This document shows, piece by piece, positions 7,059 through 32,923 of a DNA stretch of 64,000 bases (its first letter is position 1; each line of letters starts with the position of its first letter). The notes under the pieces were generated by a model. That model was given only the letters and a program-made list of their open reading frames with translations. It was not told where the DNA came from and ran no database searches. The translations under genes were made by a program, and so were the position numbers. The stretch lies in IMG/VR virus record IMGVR_UViG_3300049846_000628, positions 124,001 through 188,000 of that record; one strand, written 5' to 3'.

Positions 7059-7129
7059 CGGTTTCGTTTGAACTGAGATCAGTATAAGGGGTTGGGGTGG
7101 GGTCTCCGGAGACCCCGTGTGCCAGTGCC

Positions 7130-7318
7130 TCAGGCGTCCATCCCCATCGCATCCCGCAGGATGTTGTAGGCGTTCAGGTAGTAGTCTGCGTCAGCACCCT
7201 TACCAGCGACGCGGCAATCGACTGCCAGGCAGAGCACGGCGGTGCGGATAGTGCTCCACTGTGCCTCAGTCAGGGTGATGGAGCAGAGGTCGTTGGGGAG
7301 GACGTTGGTGCGGGTCAT
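7130..7318 (-). CDS. Early small hypothetical protein
   Basis: 62 aa; own promoter; stop inside palindrome 7118-7141. Confidence 0.75.
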   Translation of the reverse strand: MTRTNVLPNDLCSITLTEAQWSTIRTAVLCLAVDCRVAGKGADADYYLNAYNILRDAMGMDA

Positions 7319-7388
7319 CGGTCGTTTGCTTCGGTTCCCTCAGTATAGAGGCAAAAGGGAGGGGTCGTCCCCCTCCGTTGTGCCACTA

Positions 7389-7523
7389 TCAGAATTGGAT
7401 TTCTTCGGCGGTCGGCTGGGCATCGGGCATGGTATCATCCTCTGCGATCGTTTCCAGGATCTGCAGGATGCTGTCGCCGTTGCTGCCTTGGCGGAGCAGG
7501 GACATGGCAAGGTCGCGGGTCAT
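7389..7523 (-). CDS. Early small hypothetical protein (44 aa)
   Basis: Hand-translated MTRDLAMSLLRQGSNGDSILQILETIAEDD...EIQF. Confidence 0.6.
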   Translation of the reverse strand: MTRDLAMSLLRQGSNGDSILQILETIAEDDTMPDAQPTAEEIQF

Positions 7524-7581
7524 TTGAGAATCAGAGTAAAGGTTGCTGAGCAGTTTAAAGTCGTGCTCAGGACTGATAGAT

Positions 7582-7833
7582 TCAGGAGTCGAAAACGTCG
7601 CCGTTGATCTCAGCGCGGTTGATCTTAGGGTCGTCCCACTTTACACCGTCAGGGGTTTCTTTGCTGCCGCAATCATAGAATGCTTCCAGAAGTTCTTCAT
7701 AGCAGCAGATGTCATTCTCCTGAATGAAGTTGTAGATGCTTTCATCATTCTCAATCCAGAGCACCACGTTCCAGGTCTCATAATTGGTCCAACCGTTGTA
7801 GGTCTTGGTGGGAGCGGTGAGGGTGGCGGTCAT
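7582..7833 (-). CDS. Early hypothetical protein (YNGWTNYETW motif)
   Basis: YNGWTNYETWNV.LWI.NDE motif seen in many phage proteins; own promoter. Confidence 0.82.
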   Translation of the reverse strand: MTATLTAPTKTYNGWTNYETWNVVLWIENDESIYNFIQENDICCYEELLEAFYDCGSKETPDGVKWDDPKINRAEINGDVFDS

Positions 7834-7905
7834 TGGGGTTCGGTTCGGAACTTGTTTAGTATAGGGGGCGGGAGGTGCCCCCTGGTGGGTCAGTGTGCCA
7901 GTGCC

Positions 7906-8106
7906 TCAGGCGGCACAAGCGGCAGGGGTCAGGGTGACTTCTACGCTACCGTCGATCGCCAGCAGCGCCGCGTCGATGGCATCCAGGCGGGCTTCCACAA
8001 TGGAAGGCGTGAAGTGCTCAGGATGCTTCACTGCCAGACTCAGCAGCTCACCCTTCCAGGAGATCAGGGCAGTGCGGACGGTGGCGGTGGGGAGGGTCGC
8101 GGTCAT
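7906..8106 (-). CDS. Early small hypothetical protein
   Basis: 66 aa; own promoter; stop inside palindrome 7894-7917. Confidence 0.72.
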   Translation of the reverse strand: MTATLPTATVRTALISWKGELLSLAVKHPEHFTPSIVEARLDAIDAALLAIDGSVEVTLTPAACAA

Positions 8107-8139
8107 CGGGGTCGTTTGATCTGAGAGTATTCTACAGGG

Positions 8140-8310
8140 TCAGCGGGTCTGCCCGCAGTAGGAAGGGGACACTTTACAGAGTGCCTCTGCCTGCCGCTCC
8201 TGGTGCGCGTTGATGGTAGCGACTGCCTCCAGTGCCCAGGCACCTGCCACAATGCTCACCATGGCGAAGCACATAATGGCGAGAGAGTTCTGAAAGGAAC
8301 GTTCGGTCAT
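8140..8310 (-). CDS. Early small membrane protein (56 aa)
   Basis: Hand-translated MTERSFQNSLAIMCFAMVSIVAGAWALEAV..., one hydrophobic segment; own promoter. Confidence 0.6.
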   Translation of the reverse strand: MTERSFQNSLAIMCFAMVSIVAGAWALEAVATINAHQERQAEALCKVSPSYCGQTR

Positions 8311-8345
8311 CGGTTCGGTTCGGTTGATGGAATCAGTCTACAGGG

Positions 8346-8513
8346 TCAACGGGAGATGAGGTCGCCTGCAGTGTACAGTGCCTCAGCTGTCACACTGCGA
8401 ATCGGTTGCATCGGACCCCAGAACGTGTAGAGCAGGGCACCGCCGATCAGGAGTTTAATCATGGTAGCACGGTGAAACTCAGGAGAGCGGGAGCGGGTCA
8501 GGGAGCGCATCAT
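8346..8513 (-). CDS. Early small membrane protein (55 aa)
   Basis: Hand-translated MMRSLTRSRSPEFHRATMIKLLIGGALLYTFWG...; ATGA overlap with upstream ORF. Confidence 0.55.
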   Translation of the reverse strand: MMRSLTRSRSPEFHRATMIKLLIGGALLYTFWGPMQPIRSVTAEALYTAGDLISR

Positions 8514-8671: not shown

Positions 8672-8739
8672 CGGTGTCGTTTGCTGATGGAATCAGTATA
8701 AGGGGCGGGAGGTGCCCCCAGAGAGGTTAGGTTGACGGT

Positions 8740-9495
8740 TCAGTAACTGTCACAACGGGCATTGACTGCCTCCAGAAGTTTTGCCACCTTATCTTGTTGC
8801 AGTTTGAATACAACGGAAGAGTTTTTGTTTGCTTTACTCAGTCCCAGAAATGCCTTAATTCCGTTGTTACTAGTAACGCGAATTCGCAGACCACAATCAT
8901 ACTCCTTCACGCCATCAGTGAACAACAGTCGGCGGGAACCTTTTGCGCGACCTTTGAGAAAAGGAGTGTAACCCTGTTGAATGTAACCAACTGCAGGATG
9001 TTGGTCTGCTTTGTAAGTATGAAGGTTCTTTGCTACAGTATCATTCACAGCGACCATCATTTCGCTGTTAGCATCAATCATCTGAGTTTGAATGAATGAT
9101 GCTAACTGTTCGGCAGTGAAAGAATCAAGAACACCGCTGCACAGATCATTAAAGTCTTTGCGAACTTGCTTCACAAAAGAAACAGCGGAACGCTGAGACT
9201 TGGGCAGTTGGCGGTATTCTTTGATCTGCTCAAGAAAATGGGTGAAAGTATCACCAACTACATCAGAAATCTTAGTTGTGTGAATCCAATCGAACGAACC
9301 ATTCTTTACACCTTGCTTGTGTTTGATGGTCCACTTGATGTTACGCTCAGGATCAAACGCATCCGCTTTGTTCTTCGTTCCACCTTGCAGATAAATGGAG
9401 AGAGAAGCAAGGTCAAAAAAGATTAGAAGATTCTTTGTATCTTCTTCATTCTTGACGCCTTCATAATGAACGCGCCCAGTGTTGTCAAAAGTCAT
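8740..9495 (-). CDS. Hypothetical protein, possible PD-(D/E)xK restriction-like nuclease
   Basis: 251 aa; AGGAG RBS; E...KAD...TIK spacing weakly resembles type II REase active sites. Confidence 0.45.
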   Translation of the reverse strand: MTFDNTGRVHYEGVKNEEDTKNLLIFFDLASLSIYLQGGTKNKADAFDPERNIKWTIKHKQGVKNGSFDWIHTTKISDVVGDTFTHFLEQIKEYRQLPKSQRSAVSFVKQVRKDFNDLCSGVLDSFTAEQLASFIQTQMIDANSEMMVAVNDTVAKNLHTYKADQHPAVGYIQQGYTPFLKGRAKGSRRLLFTDGVKEYDCGLRIRVTSNNGIKAFLGLSKANKNSSVVFKLQQDKVAKLLEAVNARCDSY

Positions 9496-9673
9496 TTAAT
9501 TCTCCTGTGGAATTCCACTAGATGATTTGTGCTCCGTCTTTATGGGGCGCGGAACGTTCCCCTGATGAACACAGAATAGAACGAAACAGGGGGCAGCGCA
9601 AGGGGTTGTGGACGGTTCGGGAAGTGGCACAGGATGCCCTGCTGGGGGCATCTGGGGGCTCTATACTAAGGGC

Positions 9674-9790
9674 ACAAGCGAAGGAGGGGCGGGGTAGCCC
9701 TTAAGACGAAAAAGGTCGCCACTGGGGCAGCTTTGAAATAGTAGAGTGGAAAGTATAAAAAAAGGGAGGCAATCGCCCCCCGATTCTTTA
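9674..9790 (+). ncRNA. Candidate small RNA from bidirectional palindrome promoter
   Basis: Plus-strand TATACT (9662-9667) 31 bp from palindrome 9608-9631; no credible ORF; several short stems; ends at a hairpin. Confidence 0.55.
9757..9790. terminator. Intrinsic terminator, probably bidirectional
   Basis: GGGAGGC-AATC-GCCCCCC hairpin with A7 on one side and TTCTTT on the other. Confidence 0.7.
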
Positions 9791-10135: not shown

Positions 10136-10209
10136 TGGGTGAATCCCTCAGGAACAAACGTAGTATGGCGTGGATTGGGGGCAATTGCAACCCCCTGTGT
10201 GCCAGTTCT

Positions 10210-11109
10210 TCAGGCGGCACACTGGAAGCGACCGCTGTTGAAGTTGTGATAGCTGAACACCTCACGATTCACCAGTTTAAACATACCAAACTCATTGGTC
10301 AGAACGTAACCCTCAGCATCAATACGATTACCGTTCACGTATGCTGCAGGACCAGAATTGCGGCACAGGAACAAACAATCATCCTTGATGCTCTTTACCA
10401 ATGCCCACAGACGAATCAGGTTAGGGTCACAATCAAACGTGTCATCCTCACTGATAGGACGACCCTCACGAATGATAGAGTTGATTTGCTGCTTAATCTT
10501 TGCCGCTTGCTTATCAGTTACGAACTCACAAGCAGTAGACATTTGACGGGCAAAGTCGCAGACTTCTTTTACATCAGCGAACGATTCTTGACCGTGCAGA
10601 ATGTAAGCTTCAGGACGAACAAACTTCACATAAGGAGTATCGGTGATAGTAAAGTTCATCGGATACGCTACAGCATCACGCAGATCATTCTCTGCAATGT
10701 AGTAAGTGTGAGGTGCAATGATGATCTCTTCAGATACTACATCACCGAACTTGTAAGTGATAGTATTGGGGGTGTATTCAGTTTCACCACCAAACCCGAT
10801 AAAATCACCTTGAATAATACCATTCACGCGAGGCAGATAATCAAAGCAAGCGTGAAGAATTTGGGCAACTTCGCCCTGATAGTGTTGATCAATCTCCTGG
10901 TGATTGTGGGCGATACGAATCTTTTTCTTGTTAAAGACTGCCTTAGTTCCTACAAAGAACTCACCGCAGGCAGGGTCGATTCCCCATACGATTGCAGGAG
11001 CTCCGTCAATCTTAACGCTGAGAGATCCAGCAGCAGTGAACCAATCAAGACACGAAAGATCACCCGTGAGGATGGTATCTTCGGGGTGCTCAAGGTGGAG
11101 GTTTTGCAT
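10210..11109 (-). CDS. DUF6267-like protein with ligase/nucleotidyltransferase motifs
   Basis: NLHLEHPED, SVKIDGAPAIVWG (KxDG), IQGDF, EGYV, KLVNR; start reassigned to MQNLHL. Confidence 0.65.
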   Translation of the reverse strand: MQNLHLEHPEDTILTGDLSCLDWFTAAGSLSVKIDGAPAIVWGIDPACGEFFVGTKAVFNKKKIRIAHNHQEIDQHYQGEVAQILHACFDYLPRVNGIIQGDFIGFGGETEYTPNTITYKFGDVVSEEIIIAPHTYYIAENDLRDAVAYPMNFTITDTPYVKFVRPEAYILHGQESFADVKEVCDFARQMSTACEFVTDKQAAKIKQQINSIIREGRPISEDDTFDCDPNLIRLWALVKSIKDDCLFLCRNSGPAAYVNGNRIDAEGYVLTNEFGMFKLVNREVFSYHNFNSGRFQCAA

Positions 11110-11178
11110 TGCGTTTGTTTTGATGCTCTTAGTATTGCACGAATCAGGGGGCAGCACAAGGGGTCTTGTGCCAGTTCT

Positions 11179-12605
11179 TCAGGTGTCCTCAGAGTGAAGA
11201 ATGTCTAGCATTTGCTGGTGATAGTTGTCAGCATCACGAACCACATTTGCTGCCTCAGATACATCTTCAATTTCATACTGTGTCATCTCCAGAGAGTGAA
11301 TCACATTGGAGAGAAGATCAGTCAGTGCCTCAATCTTTTGTGCGTCAGTCATACATTCTCATCTCCCATATCAAGAGAACAATTGCTGTAACCTTCATCG
11401 TATCCCCTGTCATAACCTTCATCATACATTGCTCGGGCAAAGTTTAAGATTTGTAGAGTATCTGCCTTCCAACAAATATCCTCCCACTTTTCAAAAGTTA
11501 GATAATTTTCAGCAAGTTGTAGGATTTGTTCTTCAGTCATCATCAAACCTCTTCACGCATTTTGAGAAGTGCTCTACGAAGTTCGCCACCTTCATAAGCA
11601 AGAAGACCTGTAGTTTCAATCATATTATACCATCCTTCATCTTGATGATACTCAATCAGGGCAATTAGAGCGTCAATTTGTGTGGTTGTCAGAGTGGTTT
11701 TTTTGTCAGTCATTTGAGTGCGTTTTGTCCGATTGTGTGCTGAACCATTCTCACTGCCATACGAAAGTTTCCAAAGTCCATAGTTTTGTCTTCTTCACAA
11801 AAATCCTCAAAAATCTTTTTGATTTGTTCGTCAGTGATTTGTGCGTTAGTCATCAGGGGTGCCTCTCAACTGAAACTAAGATAACAGGGGGTCACGGTCT
11901 CCCGCAACCCCCCGTGTGCCACTAGGTCAACTGTCACCCTCCAGCAGTTCGGGATAGTATTGATTAACCTCTTCGGTCAATTCTTCGTCCGAATACTTAT
12001 CATAACCCTCCATCAGATAATCATAACAGAGACAAGTCATAGTTTTGAGATCCATGTCATCCAGCATTTGCTGAACCATTTGATCTTGAAGGTCTTTGCG
12101 GTTCATTTCAGGAAGTGTAAAGTGCGTGATGATACTGTTGCTGAAGACGGGAAAGAATGTCAGTCCAGAACTCTACATCCTCATCGTCATTGTACTGATT
12201 GTTTTCTTCAACCAAACGAATCAGATTGTTGAGATCGTCAGCAGTGAGATAGTTCATCAGTAATCGTAGTTTGCGTTCAGGTACTCATTCACATCGAACT
12301 TCTCATCATCACGAAGTTCGGGAATGTCCATGTCAAAGATCTCACCAGGAGCATCCTGAATCTCAGACCACATCTCATCAAACATTGGTGAATCCCTCAG
12401 GAACGAATGTAATGTAGAACGGATTGGGGGGCATTGCAACCCCCCTTGTACCAGTTACTCAAGCGGCACAAGCAACGAATTCTTGAATATAATAATCCAA
12501 GGGCAATTCAAGGCGGTTAGCCTCACTTTCCCATTCTGCCCATTCTTGCTCCGAAGCATCATTAATGAAGTCTTCGAAAGTATACTCAAAAGCAGGACCG
12601 CACAT
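11179..12605 (-). other. Run of small early ORFs (e.g. 11179-11352, 11349-11546, ORF ending 11927, 12257-12385, 12459-12605)
   Basis: Tightly packed, mostly acidic ORFs with overlapping start/stop codons, punctuated by palindrome promoters. Confidence 0.7.
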
Positions 12606-12765
12606 AATCTTTTCGGGGTCAATTGCGACGACTTGAGTAACATAACCGATATCCGCCCCCAGCACAAGGGGGTATGTGCCAGTTTCAGAACTGTCCCATA
12701 TAACGACACTGTTATATCGTTTTATAATGATATAACGAGAGTCCAGTTATTCAAGTGTCACATTA

Positions 12766-13321: not shown

Positions 13322-13348
13322 GCGCTCGCTAAGCTTGCATAAGGATCA

Positions 13349-13905: not shown

Positions 13906-16407
13906 TCAATCGTATAGAAAGTTGCGATTTGTTTTGATTGTTTGTTCTTCTTGTTTTTGAGATAGATTACTTGGTAATTCATACTGATAAATGATAATTG
14001 GTTTTGAATCATTCCAATGTCTGACTACACCTGCAATGATGAATCCATTGGTAATCAAATAGGAGAGAAAGATGACCGTTCGTATGATCGCAATAGTATC
14101 AGACTCTTTATCACACTTGGATGCTTTCTCTCCTAATGCTTTTGCCCACCATCTCCATACTGTCTTATTCTTCATAGATTGATTGCCTTGTTCGGATGTA
14201 CGTTAACTCTTTCCATTGATTCGCATAACACAAGACTAATAACCTTTCATTTTTATGAAGACGACAGGCTTCGTAGTTAATCTCATCTTTTGGTTTTGTT
14301 GCGACCTCGATTGTAATATACTGCTTATCAACGAAGTATATCCATCCTTCTACACCTTTAGTCCACGTTACATAATCATTTACCTTGGGAACATACATTG
14401 CTCTAATGGAGTTAGATTTGGAATCATTGCAGAATAAGGTGTTGTATCATCAATACTCACACGCTTACCCACTGTCTTACTATTGACTGGGGAGAAGTAT
14501 TCTTTTGTTTTTGAATTGTAGAATCCCCAGATACAACGAACATCCCCACCAAGATTGTAGTCAAACTTACGATGATGTAGAATCCAGATTGCAACAATAT
14601 TACGTTTGAATGACTCAGTTTCATAACTATAACCTTGAGGTGCTTTGTGGGGGAATTCAGGAATCACGGACTGCACGGAGACGATTTGGATTATAACCTA
14701 AAGCAAGATATTGTTGAAGACGTGCATCACATTGCTCTTTGGTTAATTGCTTCGCATCCTCTTCAATCAATGCCCAACCATCCGTGTAAAATTCTTCAAT
14801 GCGATAGAGTTGATTCACGTTGTAAATGCCTCCAGAAGACCAGATCCAAATTCATCTACCAGTGCGAACTTTTGTGCATTGACCACTCTTTCCATAATGC
14901 GATCAGTATACCGATCATCAAAAGACTGTTCGTTAGAAAGAATCTCAAATGCTTCAGTATCAGACTCAGCAATTAGATTAATCAGACCACCGTATTCAGA
15001 AGAAGGAAACGGCACCCAGTAATCAACAATGTACAGATATTTCATCGTTTGTGTTTTAGGACTCCTTCATTTTAGATTGTTTGTGAGCATTTGTCAAGCA
15101 GCTGAGTTGTCTCTCAATCTCATACTTAATCGGCAGTAGATGAGAAGAAAAGAATCCAGCATACTCTCCATCTTGTAGCAAACTGTAGATGTTCTCAGTT
15201 TGCATTAATGCAAAATTTAACTTCATTCTCCGATCCATCATACAAACTCCTGAATATAATACTCAACCGATACATCAAGTTTTTTGGCTTGCTTCTCATA
15301 AAAACGTTTCGTGTATTGTTTTGCTTCACCCCATTGCTGATAAGAATGAATCTCCATCTCAGAGTGCTTCATAAAATCTTCAAAAGCATTCATAAATTGT
15401 TTGATGTCTTCGTCGTTCATTAGTCTACAGGGCAATGAGGATGATCACTGGATTTAACACAAGCATCATAAGACTTCATCAGTTTAGCATCACGCTCAAT
15501 TAGAAATACATTCCAACCGATCATCAATCCAAACAGAATCAAGAAAACATAAGGGAACTTCATCAGCAGGCACCTTGCATAACGTTGTACTCTTGTACCA
15601 GATCAATGTTATCACCAGTGATCAGATAATCCAGCGCCAGACGCTCATCAATCTCACGCTGAGCATCCTTTTTGCTGATGCACTTGCGGGAGATGGTATC
15701 CACACCCTTCCAAGAAAGAACCTTGAGAGTGTAGTTGGAACAATCAGCAATCGGATAGAAACCAACCAGCATCGTGCCGTCTTTGGACTGGAGAGTGGGG
15801 AAGTCAATCATTGGGGGGCATCCCGATTACCTTTGTATTATAGGTCAGAAGGACGGCACCACGTCGTTGCGGAGGACAGTTCCGGATCTGTCCATTCGCT
15901 CAAAGACCGTGTAAAGTTTGTTATACAGTGCAGGAACACTTCCATATTCCCGTGCGATTTGATATTCATCACGAAGGTCTAAGGTCTGCAATGCAGATAG
16001 AATTACACCAATTTCGTGAACATTCAGTTGTAAAGTCGTTTCAGTCATTGTTATCAGTCCCAAGAAACATTTTCAAGAAGAACACCAGGCATTACATAAG
16101 TCCAGCCAGTTCCACCAGGTTTGTAATCCCATTTGTATTCATATTTGTTATGACTATCCCAAGTCATATATCCTTTCTCTTTATCAAACCTACCCTTAAT
16201 GGTCAGAGCAAATCTGTTAGAGAAGATATTGCGAGTACGAAGCGCACCGCTCTTTTCACGAGTTTCAATCACAACACAAGTATCCTCATAGAATTCAGTA
16301 CCAGACTCAATTCCACAGGCAGTTTCATAACGAAACGGACGATAGGCATCTTGTGCAAGTGCAGGAGACGCAAGAAGGAAAAAAGAAAGAAAAATAGATT
16401 TCATCAT
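13906..16407 (-). other. Run of small hypothetical ORFs (13906-14175, 14165-14398, 14380-14676, 14815-15045, 15056-15241, 15238-15435, 15563-15811, 15845-16063, 16054-16407)
   Basis: Co-oriented, abutting ORFs from the track. Confidence 0.75.
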
Positions 16408-16443
16408 CTGTGAATCTGCTTGTGTCGGTTAGTGACCTTCATA

Positions 16444-16920
16444 TTATACTGCCTGCGTCAAGCGGTTGGGGAAGAATTGTACCACTTCTGGAACTGGTAC
16501 ATTCAGTTCGTCAAACAAATACTCAACATATAAGGTTTCTTCCTGTTCCCGTGCTTCAATTTCGTGTGGTTGCATCCAATAGTCCATATCTTCCACACAT
16601 TCTTTACCATAACACATTTTTCCACGTCGGAGTCGCAGCGAACCGACCACCCACTGTCGCAGGTGCGTCAGTTCGTGCAAAAGAGTTTTTATATACAACT
16701 CATCATCCATATAGGTATTCAATTCAATCAGAAAGTGACGGGGACGATAGGTTTCACCTACAACGTCACAATATCCATAAACCTGCTCACGATTCAAACC
16801 ACGATGCACAATATCAACTTGAATCTTATGCCGTGGAAAGAAACGATTCAGAAACCAAGCGGTAACATCCTCACAGACCCGCTTGCGATAACCATATCCA
16901 GTGTGCGTAATGTAAGACAT
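16444..16920 (-). CDS. Zincin-like metallopeptidase
   Basis: TLLHELTHLRQW (HExxH) and downstream PHEIEA. Confidence 0.75.
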   Translation of the reverse strand: MSYITHTGYGYRKRVCEDVTAWFLNRFFPRHKIQVDIVHRGLNREQVYGYCDVVGETYRPRHFLIELNTYMDDELYIKTLLHELTHLRQWVVGSLRLRRGKMCYGKECVEDMDYWMQPHEIEAREQEETLYVEYLFDELNVPVPEVVQFFPNRLTQAV

Positions 16921-17425: not shown

Positions 17426-17639
17426 TGCTTGGTTGCGTATGTGCTTATTATAGCGGCACCTAGGCACCGCTCAGGAGGTCAGTAGACCAGTTCCTCATCT
17501 GGCACCCAGTAGTCATCAGAACTCATATATCCCATCCAATCTGAAGGTTCGGACCCATAGATTTCAATTTCCCGCAGTTCATCAATCAGCTCAGATAGAT
17601 CCATTGTGAGTTCCTCAGTTACTTGAATAGTATAGCAGA

Positions 17640-18053: not shown

Positions 18054-18080
18054 GATAGGTGCCTCAAATCAACAAATATA

Positions 18081-18680
18081 TTATAGGGTGTCCTGCTCCC
18101 GCTTGGATGGTGCTTGTGACAGTTTCTGAACTGCCACAATGTCCTTATATGTTTTCCTGTCCCCAGCAATAATTCCTCTAATTTTAGAAGGACAATAATT
18201 TCTTTCCTCACAAAATTTGGATAAATGATCAACTATAATTACTTCTCCAGATTGAAGTGTAATCTCATATGTTTTTCTTCTACTTTCCAACCATTTTTTA
18301 TTTTGACTTCGTTTTTTTATTCCTTCAAGATAATTTTCTCTATGAGAGTTCATAATATTATTTTCTTTCATTCTTTGTCTCAATATTTCTTTATTTTTTT
18401 GAGAGACAAGTAATCCACTATTACCTTCCCCACCATTACTCTTGTTCCTTAATATTCCAGTTCGCAAATCCTTCCTACCAAACACAGCAATCATATAGAT
18501 TTCGTGTCTAAATGCTTCTTGTTCGGTAAGATTACATTTAAGATATATTCTTTTAGTTTTATCTTTGGGAGGTTTTGTTGGTCTTCCAGTTGTATCGTTT
18601 ATTCTATCCCCCTTCCCCTTACCAATATAATAAGGAGTTCCATCTTCACGCAAGTAAGCGTAAGTGTAATAGTTATTCAT
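18081..18680 (-). CDS. GIY-YIG homing endonuclease
   Basis: YYTYAYLREDGTPYYIGKG..R..EAFRHEIYMI..GILRN; start reassigned to MNNYY behind TATAAATA. Confidence 0.88.
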   Translation of the reverse strand: MNNYYTYAYLREDGTPYYIGKGKGDRINDTTGRPTKPPKDKTKRIYLKCNLTEQEAFRHEIYMIAVFGRKDLRTGILRNKSNGGEGNSGLLVSQKNKEILRQRMKENNIMNSHRENYLEGIKKRSQNKKWLESRRKTYEITLQSGEVIIVDHLSKFCEERNYCPSKIRGIIAGDRKTYKDIVAVQKLSQAPSKREQDTL

Positions 18681-23976: not shown

Positions 23977-26900
23977 TTGTAACTCAGTTGAATGTCTTTC
24001 TTTTTAAGATTGTATCGGTCAATGTGCTTTTGACGATTGTGTTCGCTATCAAAATAACACTTGCGGGTTTCTTTTCCTTCTTTGTAAACCAACTTCCAAG
24101 GAAACTGATCAAAGGGAAATTCTTCAGTGTAGTCCATCAGGTAGGTTGCTCAACACGTTGAGTATACACGATATCAAAGAGTCCGTCAAGTATCTCATTG
24201 CACTGCTGATACTCGTCACTATTCAGAATAGCCTTCTCAATCTGATATCGACGAACAGCAGTGTGAATGAGTTTGTAATGTTCAGGTGTAAAGTTCATTC
24301 CGTTCCTCCATAAATTCTTTGCCCATCTTCATAACCCACTTGATATGCTGCCTGCAACCACTTGATGATTGCTCCATAATCATTTGTTTTTGCTGCAAAA
24401 TCAAAGTCATCATAGAATCTTTCAGAGCGGAATGAGTACCCTTCCATTTCTTCAAACCAATCTTCAAATTTCATTAGTCGTAAAGATTCTGCTCGTGCTG
24501 CAATCTATCTAGGTAATGATAAATCGTCTGCTCTGAATACCGAAACTCTTCAAATCGTTGCGGATTTCCTTCTTTCATTTTGTTCAGCATATTAATCCAG
24601 TCATAGTGTTTGTTCACGACCCACCCATAATGTTCATCATTCATTTTTCATAATCAGTAATTTTCCCACAATCATACCATAAAAAAGTTCACTTACCTTA
24701 TCATCGGCATTTTTCATTTGATCTTTTGTAAGACGAATTAACTCACTAATCTCAACATCAGTAAGTTTCCATTCAGTAATGTTGTGCTCGGTTACTTTCA
24801 TCATTTCAAGTGCTTTGGTTTTTCAGTATCAAATTGATAGAACTTTACATCCTTCATATCAAGACACATACGCACAGTTTCGTGCTCTCTGTGTTCTCTA
24901 TCTGTTCCTTTATATATCCCTCTGCGTTGATAAGCACAACACCAGACATTATAGTAGATTTTAGATTTATCATTCATTGACCTATCCTCAACTTGCGTTC
25001 ATCTGAAATAATGATATTGTAAGGGTCATCATAAGGATAGATGTATTCCATATACCATCCCAAAGATAAACCTTCCCAGAACTCATCATATCCCCAAGTA
25101 TCACCATCATTATAACAATCCAGACAATTCCAGAAGTTATGGAAACCCTCAAGGAAGATTTCCCATTTTGTTGGATTATCAAATCTCACGGCGTTTCATC
25201 ACTCCAATAGTAACGCAGTTTATCACCATCGGCAGAAATATTCAAGTGATAGATTTTATCATCCTCAGTATACACACCAATCCAAAGTGTGCGTTCATTC
25301 ATACTTTCCAGGTGAAACATTTGAATGTCTTGGAGTACGATTTCGTCTGGGTTTTCAGTCCATTTTCGGGACATTAGAGTTTTCTCAATTTATAAAAGTA
25401 TCATATCAGAAAGGGCATCCAAAATCAACTGCCCTTATTCCAGTTCTCAAAGTGTCTTTATGATATTCTTTTTCTTTTAGAAGTATCTATATTTCTTTTT
25501 TGTTGGTATCGTGTAAGTGCCCCTGATGTAGTTATAAACCCAGTTTCAAGACACATCCATTTTTGAGAATTAGTTATTTTTGAACCTTGTTTTCCAGCAT
25601 TTTTTCTTATATTATAAAGTTCTTCTGTTGATAAAGCAAAAAATCCAACACCTTTTTCATAAGATGTTTTTCCTCCTATTTTTCCACCAGGAAGAAAAGA
25701 ATGTTTATGAACTACCATTTTTCCTTCAAGTTCAAGAAAATCAATCAGTATTCTATCACACTCATAAAATTCTTTGAGGTATTGTGATACTTTTACATAA
25801 TCTATGTGTTTATCAATCATTAGATTAAAGAAGCAATAATTACAAGAATAAAAAATCCCCAAGGAATATTCAAACTAATGACTTCTCCCTTGTCGTTTCT
25901 ATCCGCATATGGAACAAAAAACTTGATAATGTCTAAAGTGTTCATCGGAAACTCTTCAATACTTTACGAATAAACTGAATAGAACCATAAAACTCTTGAC
26001 CATCCTGTCCACCAATTACAATCCAATCAACTTCTTCCAGAGCAAGTTTAATTCTTTCATCTCTGGTGAGGTCTTCAAATGATTTCTTTGCGAGTTCTTG
26101 TCGTGCTGCTGCATCCATAACCTTTTCAAAGTCTTCTTCGGATACTTTTGCGGTGGTTGGTTGTTCGTCAGTCATTTTGTTCCTGGTGCAAAAGGACTGC
26201 TGCTATAAGTTTCCTTTGGTGCTTTTACATCACACCAAATATTGGGTTCATGGGGTGTAGTTTTCAAAGGAATTGGAGGAGTATAAGGAACTGCGATTGG
26301 TTGAGTAAGTGGTTGAGAGAATGAGTATTGTTTGGTCTCATAAATCCATCGTTCCAGAATGTTGCAATCCCATCCATCATAATGTTTCTTACCATATTCC
26401 ACACAATCCTCACGATTGGGGAAAGCAACAACAAAAGTGTCTTTGTAATAAAGTGCGTAGATTTTCATAATGCCTCATCAATCCACACAAAGCCCAAACA
26501 AGTTTTCATAAAGAACCTCACCAAACGATTAGGTTTATCAGGCATATAATACCTGAAATATCGTTGATTACCAATCGTATAATAACCTTTATGAGTATTT
26601 CCCTGTTTGATTACAAAAGAGGTTTCAGTATAAGGACTAGTATAAGCAGTCAATCCAGTTGTTGTATAAGCAAGTTTTAGTTCAGGTGGAAAATGTCCGT
26701 GCTCCTTTGCGTATTCAAATTTCTCAAAAATCCTATCAAACTTTCGGTTGTATCTCTCCTCGGCATGTTCTCTTGACCATTTAGAGCACATTTTGAACTT
26801 CTCTATCTGAGCACCAATCTTCTCATCAAACTCTTGTTGGATTTCATCCAGAGTTTTAGGAGGTTCTGGAATATCCAAGTATGGTTTAATTACATCAAAA

Positions 26901-29900
26901 TGCTCATAATCTTTGTTGAAGTAAATAAACCCAAGCAAATAAGGAAGAATACTTTGAGATGCTCCTTTGAGTTTCTCTGGATTGAGTTTATACCCCGATG
27001 TCCCTATTTTTAGTGTTCCTTGTGGTTCAATCATCGTATTCCAGTATCAAAGAGTTTTCTCAGTTCATTATACACCAATATAATGTCGTGGTCAGTAGTC
27101 ATATGACCACGATCTTTTTCTAATTTTAGAAGATCATAAAGTTGTCGTGCTTGGTCTTCTGTGAGTGTGAGTTTATACTGCTTTTCAACTTCAATCATTT
27201 TCAATCACTCCACATAATGATATAAAGGTTCTTTGTATTTTCTCAGTAGTCGTATTGCATCTTGTGCTTCTTCAAGTGTTTGGAATATAGCATCTGAATA
27301 AAGAAAATACTTTTGGTCTTTAATACTATATCTTTGAATAAAAAAATAAGGTTTCAAAGTTTTTAAATTGAGGTCTTCTACAATTCGGTAATCATATACT
27401 TTCATTATTTCCGTGCCTCCCAATACTTACCTTCTTCACTACATTTACCATAAGTTCGTCTCATCAAATCACAAAAACGACCACCTTTGACTTTTCCAGT
27501 CACCAGATTTTCACTCAATACTGGATTGAAGCATAAGTCAAATCGGTCTCCACCACCAGTAAGATGTTCAAACCAATCTTTCTTATACCACTTACAATCT
27601 TTACAGAGCTTTAGATCAGTCACTGGGATTCTCCATAATCACAATCAAAGGACAAATACTCAATCACAGGTTTCCTCAAATAGTTACAAAGGTGCCACTG
27701 TGCTTCTTCAAATGTAGAATAATCACCATCCCTATATTCGTCTACAAATAGATTATACCAAAACAATCCAAATCTTTTGTGTTGTGGATAGTATCTGGTT
27801 GAGTGTCCGTCTGTTACTTTTTTGATGCGGTAGTTTTTAGTCATTTCAAATACCTGCGTCGGCATCAATAGTGAAGTTTGGTTTGTCTATGATGACCTCT
27901 ACACTCATACTACCCATAATCCCAGCAATCACATTCCTTACATTCTCCCTTGATTTAGCAGTATAGTATCCATTCCAGTTTGATACTGTTAGAGAATGGT
28001 TGAGTGTATCAATAATAACTGCGAGTTCGTGTGCTGTAAGTTTCATTTCAATACCTCATCAACATCAACACCATCATAATCATCAATACCAAGTTTGAAC
28101 CTTACGAAATCAGTGAGGTCAGTAGCATCCCGTTCATACACACAATACCCACCATTATTATCACTTTCTGTGTAATTGGTGAAGTAATCATCAAATACTA
28201 CCATAATAGCAAGGGCACGGGATTGGTCGTGTTCTGTGATGGTCTTATGGGGATGTGCTACAATTTTAGTGATACACTCAAAGAGTTCCTCACGAGTGTA
28301 TGAGAATGCTTTTGCTTCTGGATTGAGTTGGTAAGTCATTTCAGTTCCTCTTCTCTTTGGAGTTCATAAAACATATCATTCAAAAATGCAAGTGCGTGTT
28401 TTCCAACAAACCAAGCATCTTTATCCTCAAAGAATCTATCACCAACAGTTCTCATATCATAACCTTCTTTGGTTTCATCAAAGAAAGCAACAACATAACA
28501 TAACTCTTTGTCGTTGCTGTCCTTATACCACTTTACGAGTTCATACTTTTTGTTGAATTCACTCCAACGGAACTCTACATCACGAAACCTCACTCTTCAT
28601 CCTCCTCATAAGGAAACATTTCATCATACTCTTCGTCAGTGAGAGTAAGATACTGAACATCAGCATTCTTGTGCTCTTCGGCATACACTAACTGGTAGTG
28701 TGCGAAAGAAGAAGGGTCTGAACTAGCAAATTCTAGCAGACCATCAACAAAACAAAGGTAGTTCATTTTAGTTCTCCAAGATTCACAGGAGGTTTGATGT
28801 CCATAAGTTCATCATACAGCATCTGGGCAAACCCGTAGTGGGGTCTTGTACCAGTTTCAATACTGGTACTGGTCGCCACTGCCCACATAATATCAAGTTC
28901 TCTTTTATCAGGTAGTTTCTTCATCTTCCTCATCAGTCAGGACAGTTCCCATCGGACCCTTTTTCAATCGTGCCCAGTCTTCATCACGCTGTTTCCAGTC
29001 TTGAAACTTTTTCTCCAAGTCCTCATTCACAGTCAGGTCAAATTCATCAGCAACCTTACGCATTTCTTCAGGACTTCGCATATCATTGAAGGCAAGGGCA
29101 CAGGCACCTTTCATAATACCTTGCTCACTATGACCCATTGTGCGAGCAATCGTTCCAAAGAAACGGAACAATTGAATGCTGTTAATGTCTTCGGTAGAAA
29201 TCTCAAAAGTATAATGCTCTTCTGGAAGACTTTCATCATCATAAATTCCAGACCCACCATAGGTAGGAGTCCATTCAGCGTCAAAATGCACACGAAGTTT
29301 TGCCTTGTAAGTCATTGGTTTGTTGCTTATGAGAGTATAATACCAGAAAGGGCACCTGAAATCAAGTGCCCTTGTGACGGTTCTTCAAGTGTCCTCGTCG
29401 GGTAGTTCTTCATCTAAATCCACATCAATTCCATCAGTGAGTTCTTTTATTCGTTCAAAGAAATCTTCATCTAATGGAATGAGTTTCTCTTCTCCTCTAT
29501 CAATTCTATCACACATTTCCATCAGATGTTCAAGAAACTCTTTTGGATAAGTCTCATCAAGGTTGATACTTGTCCAGAACCATTGATAACATTCTTCATA
29601 AGGGTCATCGGTTGGAAGTAGGGCATAATCTGCATAATTTCCACTGATGAGGTCTCTCCACATCTTGAAATTATTCCACATCTCACGCCACCCTGTTTGA
29701 AAGCAGTGACCAATGTAATACTCAAACCAGTTCATCTTTTTGGACATAGAACAATTCATCCCGCCAGTTTCTACCAGCAATATCAAAAGTGAAACCTACC
29801 CTACCAATAGAAAATAAGCAGGAGAACAACTTACCATATCCCATAGAGATTTGAAGATAAGGAAACTCAATCCACTTCCCATACTCACCATAATCAATTG

Positions 29901-31507
29901 CAACCTGAAGAAGTGAGTATCGTTCTGTAAGAAAAAGTGCTAGATACCACTCTTTACCATAATCTTCTCTCACACCCCATTTTGCAACTTGAAAGATTTT
30001 CATAATCAACCAAATCCTTTTTTGTCTTTTTTATCCAGAACTTCAATATGACTCACAAAGTCTGATGGAGTGTTCCACCAAGACTCCTGCACATCCTGAT
30101 AGTTATCGTAAATCACTTCTTGCCCATTACTATAGACCAACTTGTAGATATGTCGGTCATACAGTTTGTCTGATGTTTGTTTGAATGTTTCAGTCACGCT
30201 GTCTCCAATCATCTGGTTTGTCTTCTGTCCACCAGTCTATCATATCATCTACACTTTCAAAACATCTTTTACCAAATCTTTCGTGACCCATTCCACCAAG
30301 ATCTAATTGGTTGAGAAAGTCATCCATCTCATCCATATCAGGATTTTCTGCTTTTCTCCTTGCCTGACGGAGTATTGTGGCGGCAGAGCGGTTTGATTTT
30401 GCAAGTTTTTCTGCCCAAATCATATCTTCTAAACTCACCTCTTCACCTTTTACAATCTTTTCGCAGATTGCTTCAAGACGCAGGCGATATTGTGTAGAGA
30501 GCATATGTATTACCAGATATAAGATTATTTATTTTGATATTCGTCCATTAACTCTTTTGCGAGTTTCATAGACCTACGCCATATCAAATACTTTACAATT
30601 GGATTTGCAGGGTTGTGAAGTATCCACCACTTTGTTTTTTCGTATTGAACTTGTGCAAGTTGAGACAGCATATAAAATGCCCTCGCTACTGATTGATCTG
30701 TAATAATCAGGTAAGCAATACAAAAAAATATAACAAAGTAAATGTATGATACACTCATTGTCTTAGAGTTTTGAGGTATTCTAGCACATTCTCACGCACT
30801 GCCATGAGTTCATTGTAACATTTCTGATTATGAGCACAATTGCGAAGCTCAGCATCAGGTTTCAATACACTCTCTTCAAACAAGGTCAAACCACGATTCC
30901 ACTTATCTACTTGGTCTTCTTGGGTCATCTTTGGTTACTCTAACAGGGCAAGAGGGGATAACTTTACGAATCTCCCGAACAATCTCAGTTTTTTGAGATT
31001 CGGTCAATCCGACAATTTTTGTGACGCGATGAATAATATTCAATGCATCGCTGCAGGAGATAATGGTTGATGCAAGTAGAACAACCATAGGTTTTTTCCT
31101 ATTCTTCTATTATTTAACTGTGTTTATAATTTTTTAATGAATGAATGCCTCTAGGGTAGCAGTTTTCTTTTTCTTTGAGGATTTAACCTCTTTTGCAATG
31201 TAAGACCTAGCAGAATTGTAATTGTTTGCAGTATGAACCTGCTGCCCGTTGTGAAGAATCATAAACTTTTTACCAAACGGAACAGCAGCCCACATACCAT
31301 CTTTAGTCACATAACCATTTGGATTGCCTGGTTTTGCATTCAAAATACCTTCGTTTTGAACGTTCATTTCATCACAGCGTTCACAGAAATGACCTTAGCA
31401 CTTGGATTGCGGGCGAGAGCAGTTTTCCTAGCATCCTGATAGTCCCGTGCTTCCACTTCCTCATAAAAGACCTTACCAGCGACGTAGAGTTGGACTTTGC
31501 AGCGCAT
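23977..31507 (-). other. Hyperplastic block of about 30 small hypothetical ORFs
   Basis: Abutting minus-strand ORFs, e.g. 24974-25189, 25186-25374, 25942-26175, 26172-26468, 26465-27034, 27205-27405, 27405-27623, 27620-27844, 27846-28046, 28043-28339, 28336-28593, 28908-29315, 29385-29747, 29722-30009, 30190-30504, 30525-30758, 31134-31367, 31364-31507. Confidence 0.75.
25458..25820 (-). CDS. Homing-endonuclease-derived protein lacking a nuclease motif
   Basis: C-terminal KITNSQKWMCLETGFITTSGALTRYQQKRNIDTSKR module typical of cyanophage HNH endonucleases; AT-rich. Confidence 0.55.
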   Translation of the reverse strand: MIDKHIDYVKVSQYLKEFYECDRILIDFLELEGKMVVHKHSFLPGGKIGGKTSYEKGVGFFALSTEELYNIRKNAGKQGSKITNSQKWMCLETGFITTSGALTRYQQKRNIDTSKRKRIS

Positions 31508-31547
31508 TGGATTTCTCCTTGTGTGTTTGGATATTGTAGCAGAAAAC

Positions 31548-32783
31548 TCAGCGTTTTACAACACTGATGGCGGGCTGACCCTGCTCGAACACGGTGTCCA
31601 CCACCGCCTGCACCTTTTTAGCGGTGCTGATGCCCACAGAAGAGTACACAGGGATGCAGACCAGTCCAAAGGACTTGGTGTAGTCTCCAAGGGCACCAGG
31701 GGCAATCCTGCCGCTCCTGAGCGCCTCTGCGTCGTCCTTGTGCAGGCGGATCACGCGCCCGATGGTCTGAGAGATCCCGATGTAGTCCATAGAGCGCATA
31801 AACAGCACCGCTTCCAGACCAGAAACGTTGATTCCCTCAGAGAGAATGCTGTGGTGAAGCACAACGAATTTCTTGTCGTTGTCCTTACCCCAGGCACTCA
31901 GGGTATCAAAGAAAACCTCACGGTTAACCTTCTGACCATCAATCACGGCACCAGTCTTAGAAGTAATATACATCCAAGAGAAACCACGATCCTCCAGTTG
32001 CTTGCAGAAATCAGTCTGGGAAACCAGATTCTGAATCTGTTTGGTTGCCTTGGAGCAAACAAGAACCTTGCCCACTTCCTGAGCATCAATAGTCTGAATC
32101 AGGTTCTCACAGTCAACATCAGCAACGATCTGACCCTTAGAGAGCATCTCAAACTGCTGCACCACAACCTTAGGAGGAACGATGAAACCACCCTCCACCA
32201 GTTCGGGAGCGGGAACGTTGCAGATGACCTGCCCGTAGACAGCACCATCGTTCATCCCAGGTTTGGAAATAGTAGCAGAATGCTTAGGAGTAGCAGTGAA
32301 GAAATAGCAGCGGTCAGCAGTAGCAGCAAAGTGCTCGGTTGCTGGAAAAAAGTTACGCTGAACCGAATTGTGCGCTTCATCAAAGTAAATGGTGTTGACG
32401 TGAATATCTGCCTGCTGAAGACGTTGCAGGGAGTTGTAGGTGGTAAAGATTAGTTTGTTGCCGCGAGTTTGATCGACCCAGTTACGGATCTCATTCGGGC
32501 GAGTCGTGCTTTGGTGATGCGTTTCACCACTGTGGACGTGCAGCACCTGAGCATTGGTGATAAACTCAAGATACTCAGAAGACAGTTGCTCGGCAAGCAG
32601 AATGCGGGGAGCAACAACTACAATCGTCTGAGGAGTCTCTTTCAGAAACTCACGCATTGCATCACAGATGCCCACAAGGGTCTTACCACCACCAGTAGGG
32701 ATAATCACTTGACCCTTCAGGTACTTAGCAAGGGCGTCAAGGGCACGTTGCTGGTGAGGTCGGAGTTGAATCACAGGTCCCAT
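31548..32783 (-). CDS. SF2 DEAD/DEAH-box (ResIII-like) helicase
   Basis: LRPHQ, PTGGGKT, DEAH, TATP, LSEGINV, QTIGRVIR. Confidence 0.92.
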   Translation of the reverse strand: MGPVIQLRPHQQRALDALAKYLKGQVIIPTGGGKTLVGICDAMREFLKETPQTIVVVAPRILLAEQLSSEYLEFITNAQVLHVHSGETHHQSTTRPNEIRNWVDQTRGNKLIFTTYNSLQRLQQADIHVNTIYFDEAHNSVQRNFFPATEHFAATADRCYFFTATPKHSATISKPGMNDGAVYGQVICNVPAPELVEGGFIVPPKVVVQQFEMLSKGQIVADVDCENLIQTIDAQEVGKVLVCSKATKQIQNLVSQTDFCKQLEDRGFSWMYITSKTGAVIDGQKVNREVFFDTLSAWGKDNDKKFVVLHHSILSEGINVSGLEAVLFMRSMDYIGISQTIGRVIRLHKDDAEALRSGRIAPGALGDYTKSFGLVCIPVYSSVGISTAKKVQAVVDTVFEQGQPAISVVKR

Positions 32784-32923
32784 CGCGTATGAAACTATTA
32801 TAGCAGAAAACCGCCCCTGGTGCGACCCAGTGGGCGGTTCTCAAAGTGTCCTATAGAAGCTCAGACTCCCATCTTCAACCCAGACAAAGGTAGTCTAGCA
32901 GTATTATGAGTATGAGTCAAGTG

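What the first reader, a model, noticed from the sequence alone, without database searches (positions are those of the whole stretch)
7118..32853. Regulon of about 19 promoters defined by a 24-bp palindrome at fixed distance from -10
Seen: a TGTG[A/C]CAGTT-N4-AACTG[G/T]CACA-like site lies 30-32 bp from a -10 box in 18 of 19 cases (centre near -55), even when embedded in coding sequence (e.g. 16478-16501 TGTACCACTTCTGGAACTGGTACA). The spacer often holds a GC stem-loop (GGGGTCTCCGGAGACCCC, GGGGGTTGCAATTGCCCCC) and the -35 is usually weak. It does not match CRP (TGTGA-N6-TCACA) or NtcA (GTA-N8-TAC). Inference: binding site for an unidentified dimeric activator. I recall a related early-promoter palindrome reported for marine cyanomyophages, so novelty of the motif needs checking; I know of no identified binding factor.
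Basis: partly seen in the sequence, partly recalled or inferred. Interest (0 to 1): 0.8.

Follow-up and report, generated by a model that had tools for sequence, protein, structure and literature searches.

The report
Cyanophage early-promoter cassette with upstream palindrome
About 22 early-gene promoters of this uncultured freshwater T4-like cyanophage carry the same 24-bp inverted repeat exactly 29-31 bp upstream of their -10 box; the same cassette occurs across the whole cyanomyovirus family, behaves like a protein-binding site rather than a hairpin, and its binding factor is still unknown.

Summary
I found 19 strong sites at 7118-32853 and three weaker ones. All are oriented with the minus-strand genes. 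A -10 box lies 29-31 bp downstream (27 bp in one case) and an ATG about 15-20 nt after the predicted start.

The window is a T4-like cyanomyovirus (Kyanoviridae) whose nearest relative is S-SRM01. The same cassette occurs in S-PM2, Syn9, S-CRM01, S-SRM01, Prochlorococcus phage P-SSM2 and 117 viral contigs, with no conserved -35.

- **Protein site, not hairpin:** the two arms do not covary, and the promoter-proximal arm is better conserved. The distal arm overlaps the last three codons and the stop codon of the upstream gene. The spacer keeps its length but not its sequence.
- **Spacer:** it often holds a GC hairpin, which the S-CRM01 record annotates as a Rho-independent terminator. The unit is therefore a composite terminator-promoter cassette, like the PeSLs of other T4-type phages.
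- **Transcripts:** metatranscriptome contigs end near the predicted starts.
- **Binding factor:** none identified. Picocyanobacterial genomes and T7-like cyanophage early regions lack the site, and the phage DNA-binding candidates I tested are not universal.
- **Best reading:** an upstream site centred near -54 for a dimeric activator, closest in design to P2 Ogr-dependent promoters.

I could not settle prior description, because the key cyanophage papers were not readable here.

The parts
7081..7141 (-). Cassette: palindrome 7118-7141 (ATGGACGCCTGAGGCACTGGCACA), GC hairpin spacer, -10 TATACT 7081-7086; ATG at 7058
   Evidence: the TGA of the upstream ORF lies at palindrome positions 10-12
7342..7402 (-). 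Weak cassette: palindrome 7379-7402 (only the proximal arm is good), terminator-like hairpin 7358-7376, -10 TATACT 7342-7347; ATG at 7318
7858..7917 (-). Cassette: palindrome 7894-7917, -10 TATACT 7858-7863; ATG at 7833
8129..8188 (-). Weak cassette: palindrome 8165-8188, -10 TAGAAT 8129-8134; ATG at 8106
   Evidence: contig junctions at 8122 and 8129
8335..8394 (-). Cassette: palindrome 8371-8394, -10 TAGACT 8335-8340; ATG at 8310
8695..8754 (-). Cassette: palindrome 8731-8754, -10 TATACT 8695-8700; ATG at 8671
9573..9631 (-). Cassette: palindrome 9608-9631, -10 TATTCT 9573-9578; drives the 251-aa ORF 8740-9495
   Evidence: RNA contigs end at 9545-9552 and depth is zero over 9600-9799 in four runs
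9764..9781 (-). Intrinsic terminator after the Kyano_Gp96 gene (9788-10135). It closes the transcription unit that starts at cassette 10198.
   Evidence: RNA contigs 9812/9857-10131/10137
10162..10221 (-). Cassette: palindrome 10198-10221, hairpin GGGGGTTGCAATTGCCCCC, -10 CATACT 10162-10167; drives the Kyano_Gp96 gene (ATG at 10135)
   Evidence: RNA depth in run X19 falls from about 69-104 to 1.9 across 10131-10200
11131..11190 (-). Cassette: palindrome 11167-11190, -10 AATACT 11131-11136; drives the DUF6267 gene (ATG at 11109)
   Evidence: contig junctions at 11159 and 11190
11878..11938 (-). Cassette: palindrome 11915-11938, strong hairpin 11884-11915 (-25.6 kcal/mol), -10 TATCTT 11878-11883; ATG at 11853
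   Evidence: RNA contigs end at 11843-11877
12411..12470 (-). Cassette: palindrome 12447-12470, hairpin GGGGGGTTGCAATGCCCCCC, -10 TACATT 12411-12416; ATG at 12385
   Evidence: contig junctions at 12401 and 12456
12639..12762 (-). Cassette with two palindromes in tandem: 12675-12698 (with -10 TATGTT 12639-12644) and 12739-12762 (no -10 of its own)
15837..15895 (-). Cassette: palindrome 15872-15895, -10 TATAAT 15837-15842
16443..16501 (-). Cassette embedded in the 3' end of ORF 16444-16941: palindrome 16478-16501, -10 TATAAT 16443-16448; ATG at 16407
17447..17506 (-). Cassette: palindrome 17483-17506, -10 TATAAT 17447-17452; drives the DUF7717 gene (ATG at 17425)
18080..18138 (-). Cassette: palindrome 18115-18138 (best match, 1 mismatch), -10 TATAAT 18080-18085; drives the homologue of S-PM2p016, which seems to start at ATC near 18056
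18778..18836 (-). Cassette inside the 3' end of the DNA methyltransferase gene: palindrome 18813-18836, -10 TATACT 18778-18783
25400..25459 (-). Weak cassette: palindrome 25436-25459, hairpin plus T tract, -10 TATGAT 25400-25405; ATG at 25374
28811..28870 (-). Cassette: palindrome 28847-28870, -10 TATGAT 28811-28816; ATG at 28766
29337..29396 (-). Cassette: palindrome 29373-29396, hairpin AGGGCACTTGATTTCAGGTGCCCT plus T tract, -10 TATTAT 29337-29342; ATG at 29315. About 82% identical over some 80 nt to cassettes in S-SRM01.
32797..32853 (-). Cassette: palindrome 32830-32853, -10 TATAAT 32797-32802 (27-nt spacing); drives the UvsW-like helicase gene 31548-32783
   Evidence: Syn9 has a matching cassette before its helicase gene.

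Best explanation
The 24-bp inverted repeat is the upstream element of a standard early-gene promoter cassette of T4-like cyanophages (family Kyanoviridae). In gene orientation its consensus is TGTGMCAGTT-N4-AACTGGCACA.

From 5' to 3' on the coding strand the cassette holds:
- the last three codons and the stop codon of the upstream gene, inside the distal arm and the centre of the repeat;
- the better conserved proximal arm;
- a 29-30 bp GC-rich spacer of free sequence, which in many copies is an intrinsic terminator for upstream transcription;
- a -10 hexamer with no conserved -35;
- a 15-20 nt leader and the ATG.

Inferred mechanism: a two-fold symmetric (dimeric) DNA-binding protein sits on duplex DNA at about -66 to -43, centred near -54. 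From there it helps host RNA polymerase use a -10-only promoter, as class I activators and the P2 Ogr family do.

Because the roughly 85-bp unit is repeated many times, it also marks the borders of shuffled gene modules, like PeSL cassettes.

Shown here: the anatomy, the family-wide conservation, the lack of hairpin covariation, and transcript ends near the predicted starts. Inferred: that a separate protein binds, that it activates, and whether it is encoded by the host or the phage.
For: Real and phased:
- 19 strong and 3 weak sites; 18 of 19 have a -10 at 27-31 nt, against a background chance of 0.064.
- Across 476 sites from 117 sources, TAnnnT peaks sharply at 29 nt (166 sites) and 30 nt (110 sites).
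- The spacer carries almost no sequence information.

Protein site rather than hairpin:
- Watson-Crick pairing between the arms equals what independence predicts at every position, and mutual information is 0.07 bit or less.
- The proximal arm averages 0.95 mismatches, the distal arm 2.16.
- The distal arm keeps the motif although it codes for the C-terminus of unrelated proteins (C-A-S, x-D-T/S), with the stop codon at positions 10-12 in 30% of sites. About 57% have a stop starting at position 10, 11 or 13.

Family-wide: the same cassette occurs in S-PM2 and S-SRM01, Syn9, S-CRM01 and Prochlorococcus phage P-SSM2.

Promoter use in nature:
- 9 of 27 upper ends of metatranscriptome contigs lie between -6 and +28 nt of the predicted starts, where about 1.6 would be expected.
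- RNA depth in run X19 steps down more than 30-fold across cassette 10198.
- Depth is zero upstream of cassette 9608 in four runs.
- The terminator at 9764-9781 fits this picture.

No canonical sigma-70 promoter is called at any cassette.
Against: - No binding protein was identified.
- No start site is mapped at nucleotide resolution. Only assembled contigs were available, the libraries may contain DNA, and contigs carry no strand.
- A centre near -54 is half a helical turn away from the classic CRP class I positions, so the geometry of any contact with polymerase is unknown.
- An upstream site could equally serve a repressor or a shut-off factor.
- The repeats could owe part of their conservation to recombination between cassettes.
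Confidence: 0.6

Rival explanations
1. The repeat is an RNA or DNA hairpin: a terminator, an RNA-stability element or a processing site at the 3' end of the upstream message. This would be the stem-loop part of a PeSL-type cassette.
For: It lies at the stop codon of the upstream gene. A perfect copy would form a 10-bp stem with a 4-nt loop. PeSL cassettes do contain stem-loops. Several RNA contigs end inside or next to the repeat.
Against: The arms show no compensatory change. Only about 7 of 10 pairs form on average, and the distal arm is often degenerate. Spacing to the -10 is fixed to within 1 bp, which a terminator does not need. The terminator role is already filled by the separate GC hairpin in the spacer, which the S-CRM01 record annotates as a terminator.
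Confidence: 0.08
2. The repeat is an operator for a repressor or shut-off factor that turns early promoters off later in infection, not for an activator.
For: Symmetric operators are typical of repressors. Two sites lie in tandem at 12675 and 12739. Picocyanobacterial promoters commonly work with a -10 alone (own knowledge), so an activator may not be needed.
Against: The site does not overlap the core promoter; it ends about 30 bp upstream of the -10. The strict phasing and the better conserved promoter-proximal arm are what a contact with polymerase would require.
Confidence: 0.12
3. There is no separate factor. Host RNA polymerase itself, through an alpha C-terminal domain or another surface, reads the repeat as an UP-like element.
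For: T4 early promoters and PeSLs carry an upstream AT-rich element in the same place.
Against: UP elements are A/T tracts, not a GC-containing dyad (own knowledge). No perfect sites occur in picocyanobacterial genomes. The early regions of T7-like cyanophages P-SSP7 and Syn5, which also depend on host polymerase, lack the motif.
Confidence: 0.1
4. The repeat is kept mainly as a recombination linker, or as the target of a site-specific enzyme that moves gene cassettes. The link with the -10 would then be inherited, not functional.
For: Breaks in synteny with S-SRM01 and S-PM2, and divergence points of environmental contigs, fall at the cassettes: 7136, 8122, 11159/11190 and 12401/12456. The PeSL authors proposed the same idea for their elements.
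Against: Spacer sequences are unrelated while their length is held at 29-30 bp. That argues for selection on geometry, not descent. Homologous recombination at any conserved 85-bp unit would give the same breakpoints as a by-product.
Confidence: 0.1

Closest known systems
PeSL cassettes (promoter-early stem-loop) of T4-type phages RB49, phi1, PST and nt-1 (Arbiol 2010, PMC2839356; Comeau 2014, PMC4122927)
   Same: A repeated unit of about 100 bp that runs from the stop codon of one small gene to the ATG of the next, in hyperplastic regions full of ORFans. It contains a GGGG...CCCC stem-loop that can sit between the -35 and -10 positions and acts as a terminator. It marks the borders of shuffled modules.
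   Different: PeSLs have a good sigma-70 -35 and an AT-rich upstream region. Here the -35 is not conserved, and the upstream region is a specific 24-bp dyad at fixed distance. The two papers held here do not treat cyanophages.
Late promoters of P2, P4 and 186, activated by the zinc-finger proteins Ogr, delta and B
   Same: A dyad of the form TGT...ACA upstream of a promoter with a usable -10 and a poor -35, read by a small phage activator (PMC3931495). From my own knowledge the dyad is centred near -55 and the activator contacts the alpha subunit, which is the same position as here.
   Different: The dyad is TGT-N12-ACA (18 bp) there, against TGT-N18-ACA with a strong inner core here. Those are late genes of temperate proteobacterial phages. 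No Ogr_Delta family protein was found here: the one CX2C-X24-CX2C protein (22013-22216) gives no Pfam match to that family and occurs in few phages.
T4 middle promoters (MotA box at -30, with AsiA)
   Same: A phage promoter class that keeps the host -10 and replaces -35 recognition by a site for an activator. Cyanomyoviruses lack motA and asiA, and how they run early and middle transcription is stated to be unclear (PMC2984593; PMC5780444).
   Different: The MotA box is a 9-bp asymmetric site at -30. This element is a 24-bp dyad at about -54.
CRP/FNR-family sites (CRP TGTGA-N6-TCACA; cyanobacterial NtcA GTA-N8-TAC at -41.5)
   Same: Two-fold symmetric sites with outer TGTG/CACA, upstream of weak promoters.
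   Different: The spacing is wrong (TGTG-N16-CACA), the inner core GNCASTT is unrelated, and the centre is near -54 rather than -41.5 or -61.5.

Membership tests
PeSL composite terminator-promoter cassette | [quoted passage not shown] | tested here: met
   22 units among roughly 95 small minus-strand ORFs; the stop codon lies inside the repeat; the ATG follows 15-20 nt after the predicted start
PeSL composite terminator-promoter cassette | Stable G/C-rich stem-loop that acts as a terminator or attenuator | tested here: inconclusive
   Present in 9 of 18 window spacers and about one third of 339 related spacers. The S-CRM01 record annotates the equivalent hairpins as Rho-independent terminators. 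Termination itself was not measured.
PeSL composite terminator-promoter cassette | Strong sigma-70-like promoter with both -35 and -10, plus an AT-rich upstream region | tested here: not met
   The -10 is present. There is no conserved -35, and the upstream region is a GC-containing dyad.
PeSL composite terminator-promoter cassette | Cassettes are the crossover points of insertions, deletions and replacements between related phages | tested here: inconclusive
   Several contig divergence points and BLAST segment ends fall at cassettes. I made no formal test against chance.
Ogr/delta-dependent promoters | Dyad TGT-N12-ACA | tested here: not met
   Here the dyad is TGT-N18-ACA.
Ogr/delta-dependent promoters | Dyad centred near -55 on a promoter with a weak -35 | tested here: inconclusive
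   The centre is -53.5 to -54.5 if transcription starts 7 nt after the -10. Starts are not mapped at nucleotide level.
Ogr/delta-dependent promoters | Phage encodes an Ogr_Delta zinc-finger activator | tested here: not met
   The only small CX2C...CX2C protein gives no Ogr_Delta match at E up to 10. It is found only in S-SRM01, S-CREM1 and DSL-LC02/03.
CRP / NtcA sites | TGTGA-N6-TCACA or GTA-N8-TAC | tested here: not met
   Consensus
Hairpin (terminator or RNA structure) | Arms covary so that pairing is kept | tested here: not met
   Observed pairing equals the expectation under independence at all 10 positions; mutual information is 0.07 bit or less.
Sigma-54 promoter (TGGCAC-N5-TTGC at -24/-12) | GG and GC elements 10 bp apart, directly upstream of the start | tested here: not met
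   TGGCAC is present, but the TTGC-like triplets come 8 nt later, only in some spacers, and the start lies about 45 nt away. From my own knowledge cyanobacteria lack rpoN.
Host regulon of a picocyanobacterial transcription factor | The same site occurs in host genomes | tested here: inconclusive
   The strict pattern has no hit in Synechococcus, Cyanobium or Prochlorococcus among 185,579 species genomes. That pattern catches only about 1% of true phage sites, so a small or degenerate host regulon is not excluded.

The most novel reading that the evidence does not exclude
The dyad is the operator of an as yet unidentified activator used by all Kyanoviridae. The activator would be a conserved phage protein, made immediately or carried in the virion, or a universal picocyanobacterial protein such as a cyAbrB-type regulator. 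It would do for cyanomyoviruses what MotA/AsiA do for T4 and Ogr does for P2. That would explain how phages without motA and asiA program prereplicative transcription.
Probability: 0.3. Interest if true: 0.8.

Novelty: new variant of a known kind. Interest (0 to 1): 0.55.

Why it matters
T4-like cyanophages are among the most abundant viruses of the ocean's main primary producers. They lack the T4 proteins that redirect host polymerase early in infection, and the review literature calls their early and middle control unclear.

A 24-bp site kept at one fixed position in dozens of promoters per genome, from Prochlorococcus phages to freshwater Synechococcus phages, gives a concrete handle on that question. 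It can be used directly as bait for the missing factor and as a predictor of early transcription units in uncultured phage genomes.

The same unit also marks the borders of the shuffled ORFan modules that make these genomes so variable.

Tried and rejected
**Prior description.** Ten searches and several look-ups found no held paper that links cyanophages with this dyad or its sequence strings. The papers most likely to show it were not held: Mann 2005, Weigele 2007, Dreher 2011 and Doron 2016. Prior description is therefore not excluded.

**Host regulon.** One scan of species genomes gave 37 hits, none in picocyanobacteria. The Acidobacteria and Nostocales hits look like ordinary intergenic hairpins; in Nodularia the site lies between convergent genes. 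Two tiny mis-binned contigs (L141, L153) are cyanophage.

**Phage-encoded binders.** None of the candidates is universal, and none is shown to bind.
- AbrB/MazE-like proteins 21089-21865 and 29385-29756 occur in only 11 and 13 phage records.
- A search of 5.8 billion proteins with the 29385-29756 protein returned only unnamed environmental relatives.
- The zinc-ribbon protein 22013-22216 is in 5 records and is not Ogr-like.
- The 55-aa AbrB-like protein 4439-4606 is in 17 records, including P-SSM2. It was not detected in the records of S-PM2, Syn9 or S-CRM01.

**Other steps that gave nothing.**
- Atlas look-ups of the conserved regulon genes (DUF7717; the T4-GC 66 homologue) gave no function.
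- BLAST with one cassette was too insensitive to chart its distribution.
- The hit at 49572 was dropped because it has no -10 and lies inside a structural gene.
- The sigma-54 resemblance of CTGGCAC was rejected on spacing.


Full report
**What the window is.** BLAST places it among T4-like cyanomyoviruses. Its nearest record is the freshwater Synechococcus phage S-SRM01, at about 72-79% nucleotide identity over parts. Sequencing runs that hold it are freshwater, river and drinking-water metagenomes. Genes from about 1.6 to 52 kb run on the minus strand. The flagged stretch, 7-33 kb, is the hyperplastic region of small ORFs. It lies between a tail protein gene at 32924-34642, followed by long minus-strand ORFs not examined here, and the gp25 baseplate gene. 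It also holds a few recognisable genes: DUF6267, DUF7717, Kyano_Gp96, a DNA methyltransferase, a sugar epimerase and a UvsW-like helicase.

**The observation.** An iterated weight matrix finds 19 sites from 7118 to 32853, at 17-34 bits. The best hit in shuffled sequence averages 11 bits.

Read on the minus strand, the consensus is TGTGCCAGTTGAGGAACTGGCACA. A -10-like hexamer starts 29-31 nt after it in 17 sites and 27 nt after it in one. The remaining site is a tandem upstream copy. The chance of TAnnnT in that 3-nt range is 0.064.

Three weaker sites (7379, 8165, 25436) have the same layout. Nothing comparable lies in 33-64 kb. An ATG of a minus-strand ORF follows 15-20 nt after the predicted start in most cassettes.

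**It is a family trait, not a peculiarity of this genome.**
- A scan of viral contigs with part of the motif returned 120 loci. Many hold 10-26 matrix hits per roughly 10 kb.
- Over 476 unique sites from 117 sources, TAnnnT peaks at 29 nt (166) and 30 nt (110) after the repeat. No other offset exceeds 36.
- The cassette is present in marine S-PM2 and freshwater S-SRM01 and in Syn9, including the site before its helicase gene.
- It is also present in S-CRM01 and in Prochlorococcus phage P-SSM2.
- The core GNCASTT-N4-AASTGNC with outer TGT/ACA is the same in all of them.
- The first 12 kb of the T7-like cyanophages P-SSP7 and Syn5, which host polymerase also transcribes, have no such site.

**Hairpin or protein site.** Across 332 sites with a correctly placed -10, the fraction of complementary pairs at each of the ten arm positions equals the product of the single-column frequencies. 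Mutual information is at most 0.07 bit, so pairing is not under selection. The promoter-proximal arm averages 0.95 mismatches and the distal arm 2.16.

The distal arm is usually coding sequence. The upstream gene's stop codon, mostly TGA, occupies positions 10-12 of the repeat in 8-9 window sites and in 30% of all sites. About 57% have a stop starting at position 10, 11 or 13. Unrelated proteins therefore end in C-A-S, C-D-S or x-D-T.

The spacer carries 0.6 bit or less per position, so there is no conserved -35. A sigma-70 scan calls none of the cassettes and finds no excess over shuffles.

Fixed length, free sequence, and a conserved dyad kept even inside codons together point to a symmetric protein on duplex DNA that acts with the -10.

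**The spacer.** It is GC-rich (0.53-0.80). It folds into a strong hairpin in 9 of 18 window cassettes and in about a third of 339 related ones. In S-CRM01 the same hairpins carry T tracts, the record annotates them as Rho-independent terminators, and an extended -10 (TGtTAGAAT) follows.

The unit is thus a composite of the end of the upstream gene, the dyad, a terminator, the -10, a leader and the ATG. This matches the PeSL cassettes described for RB49, phi1 and other T4-type phages in position, size, GGGG...CCCC stem-loops and association with ORFans. It differs in that PeSLs have a good -35 and an AT-rich upstream region.

**Transcripts.** Only assembled contigs of four river and lake metatranscriptomes could be laid on 7000-12999.
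- Nine of 27 upper contig ends fall between -6 and +28 nt of the predicted starts of cassettes 9608, 10198, 11167 and 11915. About 1.6 would be expected.
- In run X19 a contig at 9857-10131 has depth 104, while the next 200 nt upstream have depth 1.9. The predicted start is 10155.
- The lower ends of these contigs sit next to a strong terminator at 9764-9781.
- Depth over 9600-9799 is zero in all four runs.

This fits discrete transcription units that begin at the cassettes. It is low resolution, carries no strand, and DNA carry-over cannot be excluded.

**Module borders.** Points where environmental contigs stop matching the window lie at 7136, 8122/8129, 8705, 11159/11190 and 12401/12456. 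All are inside or at the edge of cassettes. Segments shared with S-SRM01 and S-PM2 are scattered in a different order, and several end at cassettes. I did not test this against chance.

**Who binds.** No perfect site occurs in picocyanobacterial genomes. However, the strict pattern catches only about 1% of phage sites, so this weighs only lightly against a host regulon.

The window encodes three proteins with AbrB/MazE-type DNA-binding domains (4439-4606, 21089-21865 and 29385-29756) and one zinc ribbon (22013-22216). None is found in all motif-bearing phages at the sensitivity available.

The near identity of the motif in phages of very different hosts argues for a strongly conserved reader. 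That could be a universal picocyanobacterial protein, a conserved phage protein, or polymerase itself. I cannot decide between these.

**Comparison and novelty.** In design the closest known promoters are the Ogr/delta-dependent late promoters of P2 and P4. These have a TGT-N12-ACA dyad and a small zinc-finger activator. From my own knowledge the dyad is centred near -55 and the activator contacts the alpha subunit. The dyad here is longer, and no Ogr-like protein was found. As a genomic element it is a variant of the PeSL cassette.

Reviews state that cyanomyovirus early genes have a sigma-70-like upstream motif, that motA and asiA are absent, and that the mechanism is unclear. One paper gives an S-PM2 early promoter as a 29-nt span, which is -35 to -10 only.

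No held paper mentions the dyad, but the primary genome and start-site papers could not be read. I therefore rate it a new variant of a known kind. There is a real chance that the motif, though not its factor, has already been drawn in a published logo.

Noticed in passing
window 6000-10000: GC content is 51-59% here, against 35-42% elsewhere. The island holds seven cassettes, nearly one per small gene. Related environmental strains show deletions or replacements here, for example a joint that skips 7801-8677.
   Followed up: partly
window 17649-18056 (minus strand): The homologue of S-PM2p016 (T4-like gene cluster 66) is intact but has no ATG, GTG or TTG at the aligned start. It seems to begin at ATC, 5 nt after a GAGG.
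   Followed up: partly
window 9788-10135 (minus strand): The Kyano_Gp96 family gene (Pfam PF23790, unknown function) forms a monocistronic unit between cassette 10198 and the terminator at 9764-9781. It has the highest RNA depth in the stretch examined (about 104 in one river metatranscriptome).
   Followed up: partly
window 4439-4606, 21089-21865, 29385-29756 (minus strand): Three separate genes carry AbrB/MazE/SpoVT-type domains, all weak Pfam matches below the curated cut-off. The 55-aa one has relatives in P-SSM2, P-SSM5, S-CAM7, S-SKS1 and S-T4, and its S-SRM01 homologue is annotated as DNA-binding. The dyad contains an inverted pair of TGGCA; from memory, Bacillus AbrB prefers TGGNA pairs.
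   Followed up: partly
window 11165-11357: A small gene just upstream of cassette 11167 is 91% identical at nucleotide level to both marine S-PM2 and freshwater S-SRM01. That is far above the surrounding 68-75%.
   Followed up: no
window 9632-9667 (plus strand): Palindrome 9608 also has a TATACT 30 nt away on the plus strand, so a divergent promoter is conceivable. The four metatranscriptomes show no RNA there.
   Followed up: partly
L124 (Mojavia pulchra MAG) 3107 and 5191; L137, L152, L157 (Nodularia, Anabaena): Perfect TGTGACAGTT-N4-AACTGTCACA repeats occur in Nostocales and in many Acidobacteria genomes. In Mojavia they lie roughly 230-320 nt upstream of two paralogous beta-helix genes. 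In Nodularia the site lies between convergent genes.
   Followed up: partly
window 15069-15097 (minus strand): This is the best canonical sigma-70 promoter match in the region (TTGACA-17-TAAAAT, 11 of 12) and has no dyad. It sits at the end of ORF 15056-15241, before a block of small genes conserved in S-SRM01. It could be a factor-independent promoter.
   Followed up: no
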